Shown: positions 34,133 to 41,818 of the stretch, in pieces
Layout of the letters: the number at the start of each line of letters is the position of its first letter
Position numbering within the stretch: position 1 is the stretch's first letter
Assembly (NCBI RefSeq): GCF_009834535.1
Contig: NC_045705.1
Coordinates: forward strand, 71,982,001-72,046,000
Length of the DNA: 64,000 bases
Source: Camelus ferus
Taxonomy: Eukaryota
Reading direction: 5' to 3'
Notes under the pieces: model-generated
The model's input: only the letters and a program-made list of their open reading frames with translations
Told to the model about the DNA's origin: nothing
The model's database searches: none
Translations under genes and position numbers: made by a program

Positions 34133-37100
34133 TTTATTGACCTTTAACCAGCAAGGGGGAAATTGAGACCAAAGGCACGATCCTTCCCCTTGGAAGGCAG
34201 CCTTCTTCAGGATTGGTTCTGGGAGTGGGGGGGGGGTTCCTTCTGACTCCGGGTGGGGTCGTATTTTCTGGCTGTTTGGGACCCTGAAAGGCAGTTACTA
34301 ATTTTGACAGAAGGGGTCCCAGCCTGTCGGGTTCAGCCCGACCTGGAGCAGGGCCCCAGCATCTTCTGCTCGGCCTCACAGCTCTGCCACGTGGGGTCAG
34401 GAGGCTGCTTGGGGCCTGGCATCTGATTGTTCCTGCCTCCTTATGTGTGCAAGGGTGGGGCTTTTCCGCCCACCCCTGCCACCCCTCGGTGGGGTGGCCT
34501 GTGGCTCCCAGAGCTCCCTCACGTCACCGAGGTGGCCTTGTGGGGCACGTCCAGGCCCCAGGGGGCCAGATGCAGCTCCGAGAGGGCTCGCTTTGCCTTG
34601 GGACAGAATTCGGGGCACTTTGTTCCTCCACTCCTCGTCCTGGCTGTGGTAGGGGTCATGGTGTCCCTGCCCTCTTGGGGCCTGTGGTCAGGCCAGTCCC
34701 CACTGGGTCAGGGGCTTGTGCCCTGTGAGGGTGGCAGTGTCCTCCAGGAAGGGCAGCATGAAGAGGCAGGGTGCATAGCTAGCTCCCCGAGACTTCGGGA
34801 ATCACCGCTCCTTCTGGAGGCCTCTGAGCGTCCAGCTTCCCTGTGGACTCGGAAGTCGGGGTAGTGGAGACGTGTGGGGCCCTGGGGCTGCTCCTGGGGC
34901 GCTGTGCTGGCTCTGCCTTGGCCGTGCTGCTCGCTGTCCTGGGAGGGGCACTGGCCACAGGTTTCGCGGGGCAGGGGTTTGTCCTGAGCCCTGTGGCTGC
35001 ATCTGCAGAGGGCTGGGTGGAGCCTTTGTCGGGGGCCTCAATGGGGTTGCAGGGCCAGGCCTGTGTGGCCCTGGGGGTGGCCTCAGAAGGGGCTGAATGG
35101 CAAGGGACCCAGCGTTCTGGCTCACAGCTGATGTCTGGGGGCGGCTTGCCCTTAGCCTTGTGGTTCACTGGGAGGTTGGGGAGGGAAGTCCATCGCCATG
35201 GCTGCAGCCAATCCTGAGGGCTGTCCTGGGCTGGGGACAGGCAGGCCAGACTGGAAGCCTCCCAGGTGGCCAGAGGCAAGCCTGTGAACGTGGCCCCCTC
35301 GTGCGGCTGCTCCTTGGCCTTTGGAATGACCTGGCCGGGTGAGGGTTCAGGCTGCTCGTGCTGGGCAGGTAGGCCAGGGAGGGCCGGCTGGTCCTCTCCG
35401 GGGAGCGTGTCCATGCTAGGAGAGGTGAGAGGCCTGGATGCCGGGGACGCTTGCTCCAGGCCCAGGGGCCTCGTGGGGAACCCCTTGGGTGTCACTGCAA
35501 GTGGGCACATTTGTCAGCGTGTCCTCCTGGCCTGTGGAGGTGCGGCCCATGGGGCCCTGTGTGGCCGCCCTATCCTGACACAGCGCCACCTCCAGGCTGC
35601 TGACCTCTAGCATCTGCGGGGCCTGCCCTCTGCCCAGCCCTGGCCTAGTGGCCGAATCTTGGAACAGAAGAGGAGATGGACAGGGATGGGGAGGAAGGCC
35701 CGGGGTCTAGAGGGTGAGTCGGGAGGAGACCCCTGCTGAGCCCACCTGTGGGGGCAGGTCACACTTCATCCTGCGCAGCTCGGCCATCGAGGCCTGCAGC
35801 TGCCTAAGCACCACGTTGTCCTCCAGGGCCCAGGGCTGGGACAGCGTGTCCTGCAGAAATTCCCACAGGCCCTCCAGGGGCAGCTTCAGGAAGCATTCTA
35901 GGGGTGGGGGTGCCATCAGGCCAGCAGGGGCCCTGGTGGGCAGTCTCAGCCCCCGACCCTGGAGTACCTGCTGTGGGCAGTGGCTGGGTCCTGCTGTGCA
36001 CCACCACTGGGGCTCTAGCTGTGCGCAGGGGAGCCTCAGGCAGGGCCATGGCAAAAGGCGGCCCCGTCCTGCTGCCTCTCCAGAGGATGCCCTGCCCAGC
36101 TTGCCTGCCGGCCTGCCCTCTCACCCGCCTGCGTGGCCTTGGTCTCCACACTTGGATGACTCACTTTTGTGCACTGTGAGGACAGTGTGGGTCATGGCCA
36201 TGAGCACATGCTCACTGTCCAGGATGTAAGTGTCCCAGAGCTTCAGGGGGAGGGTCTGTGGGGACAGCAGGCTCCTGAGCAGGGCACAGTGGAGGTGTCA
36301 GCACAGGTAAGGACACCCTCCTGCCTCTGGTCCCTACAGTCCCTGCCCCACCCAGGCTGCATCACACAGGGTTCTGTAGCTCCTTATCTGGGTGGACCCA
36401 TCCTGGGGGTTGCGGCTGCTGGACGAGGGTGCCCCCAGAAAGGCCCTCAGGAGGGGCCTGGCTTGTCTGGGGATGGGCTCAGCCTCCCTGGGCAGCCTTA
36501 CCCGGTCAGTGAAGCACTGGAGGAACCACTTGGTGGTGTGGATGCCAGTGGACATCTGTTCCTTGTCCTGATGGGGGACTCGACTGCTCAGGGCCTGCCT
36601 GGTCAGCCGAAGCCTCCCTTCTGTGGGCCGCCTGGCCCCCCAAGGAGAAGGAAAGTGAAACCTGCAGGGGTGGGCCCCCCACCCTGCCAGGGGGACCACA
36701 TCTCTGGGGGGACGCTGCTACTCACCATGTGCCGCTTCAGCTTGGGGAGGGCTCTGCCAAGAATGTGCTCGTGATGAGCCTGGAATCTCAGCAGTTTTGG
36801 GGATCCCGGGATAAAGAAGCCTGAGAGCCCCCCGGCCCCCACATGTCAGAGTCCCTCCCAGTGAGGTGAGAACTGTGGGTGCCTCAGGAGCCCAAGCCTC
36901 TCCCCGCAGTGACCCCGCCTTGCCCACGGCCCTCCCGAGCCCGGGCTGGACATGGTCTGCCCAGACAGCAGGCCTGCCTTTGGTGTCTGGGGCAGAGGAC
37001 CTGCTCCCAGAGTCTCAGCTTGGCTGCCGCTCACCCTGTACTGAGGGCCTAGCAGATGTTCGGCCCTGGCAGGCCCCCTCCCCACAGTGGCCACAGCACA

Positions 37101-40100: not shown

Positions 40101-41818
40101 GCCTTGCTGCTCTCGGCGCCGGCCGGCTCCGGGCCCTCTCCTCTCCGAGGCACGGGGCTTTGGAGAGCATCTCCTGGAGCCGACGGAGGCCTGGCTGCTG
40201 CCTGGGCTTTTTGCTGCAAAATGGGACCTGGTGGTGTTAGCCAGGCTGCCAGCTCTCCCAGCGTGGCCCTGCTGTGAGTGAACTCAAGGAGCCAGGAAAG
40301 GCCCCGCACAGCTCAAGGACGCCTCTTGACAGCTCTGCAGTCAGGGGTGCAGACAGCGCCGCCCACAACCGCCTCCTGCCTCCCAACTCCTGCCTGGGCA
40401 GTGAGGATGGGCGCTCACCCTCGCCTTGTGGGTGCTGGGGCCTCGGATGCTGAGGCTGGGCAGCTGCTCCTCCCTGGAAGGCAGGAGACGCAGAGCCGCG
40501 AGGACCTGCACCAGGCCAGCTGCCCCAAAGGCCCGGGCCCACCCCCATCAACCCCAAGGTCTCATCCCCAGAGACTCCACGGGAACGGCTGACCCCAGGA
40601 AGGTGTTGGTGGCCGGGCAGAGGGCTGACACAGCCCGGCTGGAGGTGGCATCCTCTGAGGGAGCTGAGACGCCTGGAGCTGGCTCGGGAGGGGCTGCGGT
40701 CCCACAGCAGCCCCCTCAAGAGGTGCCCCTCCTGCTGATGCAGGTCACCCCACTTTGCCCCTCCCCTCCCCCTCCTCTGCCTGAGAGCCCAGGTGTCTCA
40801 GGTGAGTTGCTCCCCGAGGCCTTGCCCTGTTCCGGGCTGCCCTCCCCCAGCAGTTCAGCCCCGCTGCAGGCCAGCTCCGACTAGGTACACACAAGGGTCA
40901 TCTGGTCCCTGCTGTCCCCCACCGGGCCTGGCCTCCTCCCCCAAATCTCCTCCCCGCACCAGACCCTGGGGCAGGTCATCTTCGGCTGTAAACTCCACCT
41001 GCCTCCCTCACCCTCCCTGAGCTTCTGAGGCCGGGTCCTACCTGCCCAGCACCCCTGGCAGTCCCTCCAGCGCCTGAGGCGCACCTGTCACTGCCCCTCG
41101 TGCCTGTCCCCCAAGGGTGCACGCCTGGGCCCCTGGAGCCCTCGGAGACCTGTGTCCAGATGCCATCACCCTGTGGCCACCTGCTGTAGAGCCACTGCTG
41201 ACCAGATGCCCTGGCCCCTCCCCCAGGCAGGCGTGGAGACCATATGGCTGAGGCCCAGGCCTGCACCAGCGCCCAGCTCTGCCCCTGCCACGTCCCCCAG
41301 TTCCCTCAGCTCAAGCCTGGTGCAGACTCTGACCCGCGGTGGCCACCAGGGCCCAAGGCCCTGAGCTGGGGAGATGGGTCCTGCCTCCAGAGACTTGTTT
41401 CTGCCAATGGAAATCGTCCCCAAGATGAGCTGGAGGGCTGTCCAGATGACTCACCACAACAAACTTGGATGGTCGGTGACTCTGTGGAGCCAGAGGTCAG
41501 CATCTTCCCATGGGTCCACTGGGGGGCCTCGTGGTGAGGGCAAGCCTGGAGCCCCAGGTGTGGAGGAGGAGGGGCAGGGTGGCTCCTCCCTCCCTGCAGC
41601 CCAGGAAGCCCAGCACCTTCTGAAAGTCACCCAGCACCAAACCGGCCTCCCTCACCTGCTCCTGCTGCCTGGAAGCCCCACCTGGGCTGCTGCTTCCCAC
41701 CGGGGACGTACCTACTTCTCCTGGGTCTGACCCCGGAAGGGCCTCACCTGTGCGTATCTGGCTGTTATTTCTGCCCATTCTGACACCAGGATGGTCTCCA
41801 GCTTCTCCATGTCCGATG
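34133..41818 (-). pseudogene. Multi-exon TBC (Rab-GAP) gene of the USP6NL / TBC1D3-TBC1D26 family, probably an unprocessed pseudogene
   Basis: Exon remnants: 41748-41818 (SDMEKLETILVSEWAEITARYAQ), 41455-41545 (VDPWEDADLWLHRVTD), 40419-40473 (EEQLPS...HKAR), ~38342-38380 (LSHVLAAYSVYNT, no acceptor), 37469-37591 ([31 protein letters not shown]), 36726-36820 ([21 protein letters not shown]), 36502-36567 ([12 protein letters not shown]), 36165-36255 (LKLWDTYILDSEHVL), 35746-35897 (LRQLQASMAELRRMKCDLPP), 34779-35494 (FPTRPLGLEQ...WTSLPNLP). Exon order and most phases match USP6NL. AATAAA at 34133-34138. Confidence 0.88.
38480..39600 (-). mobile_element. Antisense L1 3' fragment inside the TBC gene, carrying (AC)6...(TG)10 microsatellites
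   Basis: T-rich L1M-like text (ttttgcagagtgaaaggtttaaag..., cagtgatggatgggagttcctgttgctccacatcct). Microsatellites at 39246-39292. Confidence 0.7.

What the first reader, a model, noticed from the sequence alone, without database searches (positions are those of the whole stretch)
34133..41818. Unexpected USP6NL/TBC1D3-family Rab-GAP gene between HRAS and RNH1
About ten exons reproduce the USP6NL (RN-tre) exon order and peptides: PWEDAD, HVLAAYSVYNT, EVGYCQG...[38 protein letters not shown]. The Pro/Ser-rich tail WTSLPNLP resembles TBC1D3 WNSMPRLP. It is intron-containing, so it arose by duplication or transposition, not retroposition. I know of no protein-coding gene in this interval in human or mouse. 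It keeps the glutamine-finger YCQG that hominoid TBC1D3 lost. It may represent a non-primate branch or ancestral site of the family that produced TBC1D3/TBC1D26/USP6. Its position next to HRAS is notable because TBC1D3 is reported to enhance EGFR-Ras signalling; any functional link is speculation.
Basis: partly seen in the sequence, partly recalled or inferred. Interest (0 to 1): 0.8.

Follow-up and report, generated by a model that had tools for sequence, protein, structure and literature searches.

The report
Decayed Rab-GAP gene beside camel HRAS
The stretch next to HRAS is a real USP6NL/TBC1D3-family gene, but in this camel genome it is a broken, still-transcribed pseudogene of a gene already annotated in many vertebrates, so it is mostly ordinary, though it marks the place from which intact copies in other mammals were duplicated.

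Summary
The window is a Camelus genome, 99% identical to a dromedary contig.

The gene belongs to a second USP6NL-type paralogue. It is annotated as 'USP6 N-terminal-like protein' in hundreds of vertebrates, and Xenopus calls it usp6nl2.L. A 218-aa dromedary GenBank model already covers this locus.

Intact relatives have 13 coding exons. The camel copy has six disabling lesions:
- a 5-nt insertion in exon 2;
- a 2.46-kb deletion removing exons 4-6, which carry the arginine finger;
- a lost exon-7 acceptor;
- a 2-nt insertion in exon 8;
- a 1-nt deletion in exon 12;
- a resulting TGA at the first codon of exon 13.

All lesions are shared with the dromedary and absent from hippo, pig, horse and otter. 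RNA-seq contigs show minus-strand splicing at orthologous junctions, but with intron 8 retained and exon 11 skipped. I conclude it is a transcribed pseudogene.

Side result: the intact copies in hippo, horse and mustelids lie beside decayed HRAS fragments, so they were copied out of this flank. In opossum the intact gene lies beside a 189-aa Ras-family gene, presumably HRAS. The proposed link to TBC1D3 could not be tested, because no TBC1D3 sequence was retrievable.

The parts
41748..41810 (-). Coding exon 1 (63 nt). ATG at 41808-41810. Encodes MEKLETILVSEWAEITARYAQ. Donor gtgagg, ends in phase 0.
   Evidence: Sequence read. tblastn to pig, hippo and ferret orthologues. DNA alignment to horse exon 1. 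Splice sites listed.
41455..41545 (-). Exon 2 (91 nt; horse and otter have 86). Carries PWEDAD. A camel-specific 5-nt insertion just after the acceptor shifts the frame relative to exon 1.
   Evidence: Multi-species exon alignment. Frame analysis from the sequence. Identical in dromedary.
40419..40473 (-). Exon 3 (55 nt; an in-frame longer form also seen in pig and sperm whale). Encodes ..LSIRGPSTHKAR. The dromedary has a further 21-nt deletion that removes its donor.
40178..40213 (-). Exon 4 acceptor plus its first ~13 nt, then the deletion junction. The 2,463 nt of the hippo locus (L001 11995-14457) that hold exons 4, 5 and 6 are replaced by about 23 nt. The lost coding sequence includes RADKW..., YKG.PPQVRG and the arginine finger IDLDVNRTF.
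   Evidence: Colinearity jump in blastn. Hippo exons 4-6 mapped to L001 11987-13478, with no window counterpart. Breakpoint alignments. Same structure in dromedary, colinear at 98.99% with no large gap.
38342..38380 (-). Exon 7 remnant (..LSHVLAAYSVYNT). The acceptor AG and the first ~10 nt of the exon are lost. The donor is intact and is used in RNA.
   Evidence: Alignment to hippo, pig, horse and otter. RNA joint 38342|37591.
37469..37591 (-). Exon 8 (123 nt; every intact relative has 121). Holds the glutamine-finger motif YCQG (Q at 37574-37576). A camel-specific 2-nt insertion near its 3' end shifts the frame. A cryptic donor at 37465 could restore it. The following intron is retained in RNA contigs.
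   Evidence: Pfam RabGAP-TBC 39.5 bits, profile positions 85-123. Translation. Alignment. RNA contig covering 36725-37591 without a gap.
36726..36820 (-). Exon 9 (95 nt, no indel). Encodes [14 protein letters not shown]...
   Evidence: RNA joint to exon 10.
36502..36567 (-). Exon 10 (66 nt, no indel). Encodes ...[10 protein letters not shown].
   Evidence: RNA joints 36726|36567 and 36502|35897.
36165..36255 (-). Exon 11 (91 nt; relatives have 100; in-frame 9-nt deletion). Encodes LPLKLWDTYILD... It is skipped in the only assembled spliced form.
   Evidence: for the alignment. for the joint from exon 10 directly to exon 12.
35746..35897 (-). Exon 12 (152 nt; all relatives have 153). A camel-specific 1-nt deletion lies 7 nt before the donor.
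   Evidence: An RNA contig identical to the window over 35746-35898.
34120..35494 (-). Last exon. When spliced to exon 12 its first codon reads TGA (35492-35494). The homologous reading frame (35492-34785) holds the Pro/Ser-rich tail with WTSLPNLP (35169-35192). Further downstream, motifs conserved in horse, ferret and narwhal (FMLPFLED..., WGLDVPHKATSVT) lie in two other frames.
   Evidence: RNA joint 35746|35494.
34133..34138 (-). AATAAA polyadenylation signal of the relic gene. The RNA contig ends about 34122. The HRAS 3' end on the other strand lies only ~150 nt away.
   Evidence: Sequence. Contig extent.
32329..33662 (+). HRAS coding exons (intact, canonical peptides). HRAS is the convergent neighbour that defines the locus.
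   Evidence: The dromedary annotation gives a 189-aa Ras protein at the same place.

Best explanation
The feature is the camelid copy of an old second USP6NL-type Rab-GAP gene. Databases call it 'USP6 N-terminal-like protein', and Xenopus calls it usp6nl2. It sits at its therian position, tail to tail with HRAS.

In Camelus it is a pseudogene. A 2.46-kb deletion removed exons 4-6, which encode the N-terminal third of the TBC domain and the catalytic arginine finger. The exon-7 acceptor is gone. Exons 2, 8 and 12 carry frame-shifting indels, and the exon 12-13 junction creates an immediate TGA.

The promoter and most splice sites still work, so the locus yields a polyadenylated, partly spliced non-coding RNA with intron 8 retained and exon 11 skipped. 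No Rab-GAP can be made from it.

Shown: the lesions, their sharing by two camel assemblies, the splicing, and the family membership. Inferred: that no protein is made, and that inactivation is fairly recent within the camelid lineage, because the dN/dS ratio is only moderately raised.
For: Family:
- Exon 8 matches Pfam RabGAP-TBC.
- The nearest proteins are USP6NL-like.
- The best match is the dromedary protein KAB1251314.1 at 98% identity.
- Full-length relatives occur in pig, hippo, horse, mustelids, marsupials, birds and frogs.
- Trees place the camel sequence inside Cetartiodactyla.

Gene structure:
- Horse and otter have 13 coding exons of 66, 86, 40, 81, 108, 110, 49, 121, 95, 66, 100 and 153 nt plus a terminal exon.

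Lesions:
- Exon-by-exon DNA alignments and deletion breakpoints.
- No indel difference from the dromedary at any lesion.
- RNA-derived contigs have 0 differences from the window across the exon 8 and exon 12 indels. Assembly error is therefore excluded.

Reading frames:
- From the ATG through the orthologous exons the frame stops after 88-111 aa of mostly out-of-frame sequence.
- Only Pfam profile positions about 79-213 of 216 remain encodable.

Transcription:
- CT..AC joints lie exactly at exons 7|8, 9|10, 10|12 and 12|13. Intron 8 is covered by a continuous contig in RNA run X1.
- An AATAAA signal is present.

Constraint:
- dN/dS on the camel branch is 0.42-0.62, against 0.23-0.43 on the hippo, pig and horse branches.
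Against: - dN/dS on the camel branch is well below 1. The camel-dromedary comparison (dN 0.004, dS 0.015) has too few changes to show neutrality. Sequence decay outside the indels is therefore modest.
- Most splice sites and the ATG are intact.
- A 198-aa frame can be assembled by joining exon 1 to exon 8 and using a cryptic exon-8 donor. A submitter's gene model in dromedary does roughly that.
- Only Logan contigs from a few runs were seen, and these drop rare isoforms.
- Whether camels keep another, intact copy elsewhere is unknown.
Confidence: 0.85

Rival explanations
1. The locus still codes for a short protein of about 198 aa. This would be made by splicing exon 1 directly to exon 8 and using the cryptic exon-8 donor 4 nt downstream. 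The product would hold the C-terminal half of the TBC domain with YCQG but no arginine finger and no Pro/Ser tail. It would be a neofunctionalised or dominant-negative fragment.
For: - The frame exists: 198 aa ending at the TGA of exon 13.
- The 2-nt insertion plus a 4-nt donor shift would add exactly two codons.
- The dromedary GenBank model has nearly this structure and scores 88 bits on Pfam RabGAP-TBC.
- dN/dS is below 1.
Against: - RNA contigs join exon 8 to exon 7, not to exon 1. They retain intron 8 and skip exon 11, and each of these breaks the frame.
- The region from exon 7 up to about 41990 is one unspliced contig in the same run.
- Half a TBC domain, lacking Pfam positions 2-78, is unlikely to fold.
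- The dromedary model is a submitter's prediction with no evidence attached.
- The dromedary has lost the exon-3 donor as well, as expected for ongoing decay.
Confidence: 0.07
2. The gene is intact, and the apparent lesions are assembly or alignment artefacts.
For: The exon 12 deletion lies in a C-run, a context prone to sequencing error.
Against: - Every lesion is present in an independent dromedary assembly that differs from the window by 1%.
- RNA-derived contigs reproduce the exon 8 and exon 12 indels without a single difference.
- The region holds no N runs; the only ones are at 59313-59909.
- Exons 4-6 give no tblastn match anywhere in the window.
Confidence: 0.02
3. The relic is kept as a functional non-coding transcription unit, for example to terminate or modulate convergent HRAS transcription. 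The two 3' ends lie about 150 nt apart.
For: - The locus is still transcribed, spliced and polyadenylated despite the loss of coding capacity.
- The ~90-130 nt around the two 3' ends (33843-34020) are conserved even in colugo, otter and ferret copies.
Against: - No test of function was possible.
- Residual transcription is common for young pseudogenes.
- The conserved piece travels with copies that have no working HRAS beside them, so it is more likely the TBC gene's own 3' end.
Confidence: 0.05

Closest known systems
'USP6 N-terminal-like protein' second paralogue. Examples: Xenopus laevis usp6nl2.L, pig and warthog LOC genes, horse XP isoform X1, ferret and otter, opossum.
   Same: - It is the closest sequence relative of the camel relic.
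- The 13-exon layout and splice phases are the same.
- The post-TBC block (LKLPLEGL.EFLQD...CDLPP) is the same.
- In placentals the Pro/Ser tail has the same W-x-S-L-P-x-[LI] motif.
- In opossum the orientation and 0.5-kb spacing to a 189-aa Ras-family gene, presumably HRAS, are the same.
   Different: Those genes are intact, with the arginine finger IDLDVNR and the glutamine finger YCQG. The camel copy has lost exons 4-6 and its reading frame.
Camelus dromedarius KAB1251314.1 (218 aa, 'USP6 N-terminal-like protein')
   Same: It is the same locus in a sister species. The DNA is 98.99% identical over 11.3 kb and carries all the same lesions.
   Different: It is annotated as a protein by skipping exons 2-7 and using a far-downstream 3' exon. 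The RNA contigs seen here do not support that structure.
USP6NL / RN-tre (Rab5/Rab41/Rab43 GAP; established knowledge)
   Same: It belongs to the same TBC subfamily. The colugo orthologue's model finds mouse and human USP6NL as top Foldseek hits, at E about 3e-20. The N-terminal coiled segment, PWEDAD and the two-finger TBC domain are shared in intact relatives.
   Different: It is a different paralogue. True placental USP6NL proteins (about 820-830 aa) were not among the 120 best hits of the pig orthologue. USP6NL is not HRAS-linked (my knowledge). The direct tree with USP6NL could not be built.
TBC1D3 / USP6 TBC part (primate segmental-duplication family)
   Same: - It is a family-level structural and sequence relative. 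USP6 and eleven TBC1D3 paralogues follow USP6NL in the Foldseek list.
- NCBI names some orthologues 'TBC1 domain family member 3K/3G/3L-like' or 'USP6-like'.
- Like TBC1D3, the family is multi-copy and dispersed in some lineages: canids, pigs and colugo.
- The colugo copies have lost both catalytic fingers. As I recall, TBC1D3 has too.
   Different: No TBC1D3 sequence could be retrieved, so neither the tail resemblance nor the branching order was tested. Published work treats TBC1D3 as simian-specific and derived from USP6NL (PMC11610581, PMC6920530, bioRxiv 10.64898/2026.01.14.699559).

Membership tests
TBC / Rab-GAP domain (Pfam PF00566) | Significant match to the domain profile | tested here: met
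   The exon 8 stretch scores 39.5 bits (cut-off 25.2, profile 85-123). The exon 9 stretch scores 17.3 bits (profile 123-167). The dromedary model of the same exons scores 88 bits over profile 79-213.
TBC / Rab-GAP domain (Pfam PF00566) | Complete domain, profile positions 2-216, as in horse residues 103-311 | tested here: not met
   Profile positions 2-78 are encoded by exons 5-7. Exons 5 and 6 are deleted and exon 7 is truncated.
Catalytically competent TBC GAP (dual-finger mechanism) | Arginine finger IxxDxxR | tested here: not met
   The exon carrying IDLDVNRTF (hippo L001 13369-13478) lies inside the 2.46-kb deletion. No match exists in the window.
Catalytically competent TBC GAP (dual-finger mechanism) | Glutamine finger YxQ | tested here: met
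   EVGYCQG is present at 37571-37591. It is present in the sequence only, because the frame around it is broken.
HRAS-flank USP6NL paralogue ('usp6nl2' type) | Closest relatives and tree position among these genes | tested here: met
   The camel sequence falls with hippo, pig and whales inside the placental clade. Support is SH-aLRT 95 in the quick tree and 84/94 in the careful tree. The DNA tree gives 93/95.
HRAS-flank USP6NL paralogue ('usp6nl2' type) | Shared exon-intron layout with the same phases | tested here: met
   Nine whole exons (1-3 and 8-13) and a truncated exon 7, out of 13, align to horse exons with conserved splice sites. The other three are deleted rather than different.
HRAS-flank USP6NL paralogue ('usp6nl2' type) | Convergent neighbour of HRAS | tested here: met
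   Seen in the window, in dromedary and in opossum. No HRAS lies within 10 kb in penguin, platypus or Xenopus, so the linkage is shown for therians only.
HRAS-flank USP6NL paralogue ('usp6nl2' type) | Distinct from true USP6NL in a joint tree | not testable with these tools
The only support is the Xenopus symbol usp6nl2.L and the absence of placental USP6NL from the top 120 hits.
TBC1D3 family | Groups with TBC1D3 rather than USP6NL; shared tail motif | not testable with these tools
   Searches with horse and colugo tails returned no primate protein. Foldseek identities do not discriminate: colugo versus USP6NL 33-34%, USP6 35%, TBC1D3 31-33%.
Pseudogene (non-processed) | Several independent disabling lesions relative to intact orthologues, confirmed in a second genome | tested here: met
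   +5 nt in exon 2, exons 4-6 deleted, exon 7 acceptor lost, +2 nt in exon 8, -1 nt in exon 12, and TGA at the start of exon 13. All are shared with dromedary.
Pseudogene (non-processed) | Neutral evolution (dN/dS near 1) | tested here: inconclusive
   The camel branch gives 0.42-0.62, against 0.23-0.43 for relatives. Camel versus dromedary has too few changes to judge.

The most novel reading that the evidence does not exclude
The HRAS flank may be the source locus of the whole TBC1D3-type lineage. On this reading, an old HRAS-linked USP6NL paralogue was repeatedly copied out of this flank in placental mammals. It is intact beside a 189-aa Ras-family gene, presumably HRAS, in opossum. The copies sometimes dragged pieces of HRAS along; decayed HRAS fragments with different breakpoints lie beside the intact copies of hippo, horse and mustelids. 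The copies expanded in some lineages (canids, pigs, colugo), while the original decayed, leaving the camel relic.

Primate TBC1D3 and the USP6 TBC part would then be the simian branch of this lineage. They would not be a primate-specific, abruptly diverged duplicate of USP6NL, which is what current papers assume. The colugo copies, from the sister order of primates, have already lost both catalytic fingers.
Probability: 0.45. Interest if true: 0.6.

Novelty: already known. Interest (0 to 1): 0.3.

Why it matters
For this window the practical result is an annotation correction. The dromedary protein model for this locus, and any similar call in other camels, describes a pseudogene. The retained glutamine finger should not be read as activity.

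The wider value is evolutionary. Recent papers call TBC1D3 primate- or simian-specific. They derive it from USP6NL despite only 34% identity, and they report no ancestral paralogue. An older HRAS-linked paralogue exists with intact, sometimes multi-copy descendants in non-primate placentals. The HRAS fossils beside those copies give a concrete and testable alternative origin, and a second set of lineages (canids, pigs) in which to study the same kind of duplication-driven gene family.

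Tried and rejected
1. I first read KFVVVSHLDSPP... (41314-41496, another frame) as the continuation of exon 2. Alignment to real orthologues showed it is intron.
2. A weak alignment suggested that the first half of exon 4 survives. Breakpoint alignment to hippo showed that only the acceptor and about 13 nt remain.
3. I searched for RNH1 leucine-rich repeats to check the phrase 'between HRAS and RNH1'. 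None were found in the window, and only LRRC56 appeared on the other side of HRAS.
There are therefore no junction data for the 5' half.
5. I tried to obtain TBC1D3 or true USP6NL sequences through tail-restricted searches with horse and colugo proteins. No primate protein was returned.
6. I modelled the colugo protein (mean pLDDT 57) and ran Foldseek against Swiss-Prot. This gave family-level hits only, and the identities did not discriminate.
7. I tested whether the camel copy is an older paralogue outside all other laurasiatherian copies, which would imply one ancient duplication. The trees place it in Cetartiodactyla, but the AU test does not reject the alternative (p = 0.105).
8. I looked for shared derived changes among the decayed HRAS fragments to test for a single origin. 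Too few sites were comparable, so only the differing breakpoints speak, and they favour separate events.
9. I looked for HRAS linkage beyond therians. No HRAS lies within 10 kb of the gene in penguin, platypus or Xenopus.
10. The 'Tim29' gene called near the hippo copy has stops in my translation and is absent from the other loci, so it is uninformative.
11. A tandem-repeat scan of 33600-46500 found nothing.
12. Literature searches for usp6nl2 or USP6NL-like paralogues found no paper on the subject.

Full report
**What is there.** On the minus strand between 41810 and about 34120 lies a multi-exon gene. Exon 8 (37469-37591, EVGYCQG...EEDAFWAL) matches Pfam RabGAP-TBC above the curated cut-off. 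When searched against 1.8 billion representative proteins it finds USP6NL-like proteins. The gene ends at an AATAAA signal (34133-34138), about 150 nt from the 3' end of HRAS. HRAS lies convergently on the + strand, with coding exons at 32329-33662. LRRC56-type repeats lie on the other side of HRAS at about 16.6 kb. RNH1 is not inside the window.

**Which genome and which gene.** The best protein match, at 98% identity, is Camelus dromedarius KAB1251314.1, a 218-aa 'USP6 N-terminal-like protein'. Its locus is 98.99% identical to the window over 11.3 kb and has the same neighbours. The window is therefore a Camelus genome.

Full-length relatives are annotated in many groups:
- Placentals: pig, warthog, hippo, horse, donkey, otters, ferret, many canid loci, and colugo.
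- Other vertebrates: marsupials, platypus, birds, reptiles, amphibians and fish.

No paper on this second paralogue was found.

**Anatomy against intact relatives.** I rebuilt the exon chains of the hippo, horse, otter and pig proteins on their loci. Horse and otter have 13 coding exons of 66, 86, 40, 81, 108, 110, 49, 121, 95, 66, 100 and 153 nt plus a long last exon. Aligning each exon to the window gives the following:

| Exon | Window state | Consequence |
|---|---|---|
| 1 | Intact; ATG at 41808-41810 | None |
| 2 | 5-nt insertion just after the acceptor | Frameshift |
| 3 | Present | None |
| 4-6 | Only the exon 4 acceptor and ~13 nt remain; 2,463 nt of the hippo locus (exons 4, 5, 6) replaced by ~23 nt at 40178-40200 | Arginine finger IDLDVNRTF lost |
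| 7 | Acceptor and first ~10 nt lost | No acceptor |
| 8 | 2-nt insertion near its end | Frameshift |
| 9, 10 | Clean | None |
| 11 | 9-nt deletion | In frame |
| 12 | 1-nt deletion before the donor | Spliced exon 13 starts with TGA |
| 13 | Downstream conserved motifs lie in two other frames | Tail not readable |

None of these changes occurs in hippo, pig, horse or otter. All occur in the dromedary, which has an extra 21-nt deletion removing the exon-3 donor. RNA-derived contigs reproduce the exon 8 and exon 12 indels exactly, so they are not assembly errors. From the ATG through the orthologous exons, translation stops after 88-111 residues of mostly out-of-frame sequence. Only Pfam profile positions about 79-213 of 216 remain encodable.

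**Expression.** RNA-seq runs labelled as reproductive-system samples hold the region. In run X1 the contigs show joints with CT..AC ends, which are GT..AG on the minus strand. The joints fall exactly at exons 7|8, 9|10 and 12|13, and at 10|12 with exon 11 skipped. Intron 8 is covered by one continuous contig. The stretch from the exon-7 donor up to about 41990 is a single unspliced 3.65-kb contig. The locus is therefore transcribed from its own strand and partly spliced, and no assembled form keeps an open frame.

**Selection.** Over 294 shared codons, the camel branch has dN/dS of 0.42-0.62, compared with 0.23-0.43 for the hippo, pig and horse branches. Constraint is relaxed but evolution is not fully neutral. 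This fits inactivation part-way along the camelid lineage, but the test alone is inconclusive.

**Best explanation and rivals.** The best explanation is a transcribed non-processed pseudogene (confidence 0.85).

The main rival is a 198-aa half-TBC protein. It would be made by joining exon 1 to exon 8 and using a cryptic donor 4 nt further on. The dromedary model does roughly this. The observed junctions contradict it, and half a TBC domain without the arginine finger is unlikely to fold or to act as a GAP.

Assembly artefact is excluded. A regulatory non-coding role beside HRAS cannot be excluded, but nothing supports it.

**Evolutionary context (side results).**
- In opossum the intact gene lies 0.5 kb from a convergent 189-aa Ras-family gene, presumably HRAS, as in camel.
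- The loci of the intact hippo, horse, otter and ferret genes are colinear with the window on both sides. Where the window has HRAS, however, they have decayed HRAS.
- The hippo fragment retains homologues of coding exons 2-4 and only part of exon 1. It has an in-frame stop and has lost the 5' part of the ATG exon, including the ATG.
- The horse has a broken exon 4. The mustelids have half of exon 3, and in ferret the fragment is also present as an inverted copy.
- The HRAS-side breakpoints differ: about 31244 in hippo, about 32990 in mustelids and about 33460 in horse.
- These intact genes therefore sit in segments duplicated out of the HRAS flank, probably more than once.
- Trees place camel with hippo, pig and whales. 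An AU test does not exclude an older single duplication (p = 0.105).
- Penguin, platypus and Xenopus show no HRAS within 10 kb.
- Canids carry many dispersed copies, and pig and warthog carry several on unplaced scaffolds. Colugo has two copies in which both catalytic fingers are replaced: IDLEVSC and YCEG.

**Relation to TBC1D3.** Published work treats TBC1D3 as primate- or simian-specific and derived from USP6NL with only 34% identity, and it found no ancestral paralogue (PMC11610581; PMC6920530; bioRxiv 10.64898/2026.01.14.699559). The data here make an older HRAS-linked paralogue a plausible source. I could not retrieve any TBC1D3 or true USP6NL sequence. Foldseek of a colugo model lists USP6NL, USP6 and the TBC1D3 paralogues as top hits, but with indistinguishable identities.

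**Verdict.** The object is a known kind and the locus is already annotated. In this genome it is a dead gene. Interest is modest for the window itself and higher for the untested origin hypothesis.

Noticed in passing
L001 20340-23108 (hippo), L003 22786-23038 (horse), L004 18512-19289 (otter), L008 18459-21752 (ferret): The intact USP6NL-like genes of these species are followed by decayed HRAS fragments, not by a working HRAS. The fragments carry stops and deletions and have different breakpoints, and in ferret there is an inverted duplicate. The intact copies therefore lie in segments duplicated out of the HRAS flank.
   Followed up: partly
proteins P0268-P0301 and others: Red fox, arctic fox, jackal, raccoon dog and African wild dog have many USP6NL-like or 'TBC1D3K-like' genes on contigs of very different sizes. 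This is a canid expansion reminiscent of primate TBC1D3. Pig and warthog have several copies on unplaced scaffolds.
   Followed up: no
P0107, P0342; locus L006 (Cynocephalus volans): Colugo, from the sister order of primates, has two copies on one chromosome. In them the arginine finger reads IDLEVSC and the glutamine finger reads YCEG, so both catalytic residues are replaced. The copies sit on a very long branch in the trees (1.1-1.3 changes per site).
   Followed up: partly
window 33843-34020: The short stretch around the facing 3' ends of HRAS and the relic gene is conserved at 70-79% in colugo, otter and ferret copies, although the rest of the flank is not alignable there.
   Followed up: no
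L005 about 11375-11395 (dromedary; equals window 40416-40436): The dromedary has an extra 21-nt deletion that removes the exon-3 donor. This is a lineage-specific further step of decay after the two camels split.
   Followed up: yes
window 58500-59910: LINE-1 ORF2-like open frames lie next to three N runs (59313-59459, 59474-59648, 59767-59909).
   Followed up: no
window 33147-33606: An earlier first-stage note (s1-149408) proposes an altered HRAS IDX exon isoform in the intron before the last HRAS exon. It was not examined here.
   Followed up: no
window 62000-64000: A GC-rich, CpG-island-like end of the window (65% G+C) could be the promoter of the next gene (RNH1?), but no coding exon was identified.
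   Followed up: no
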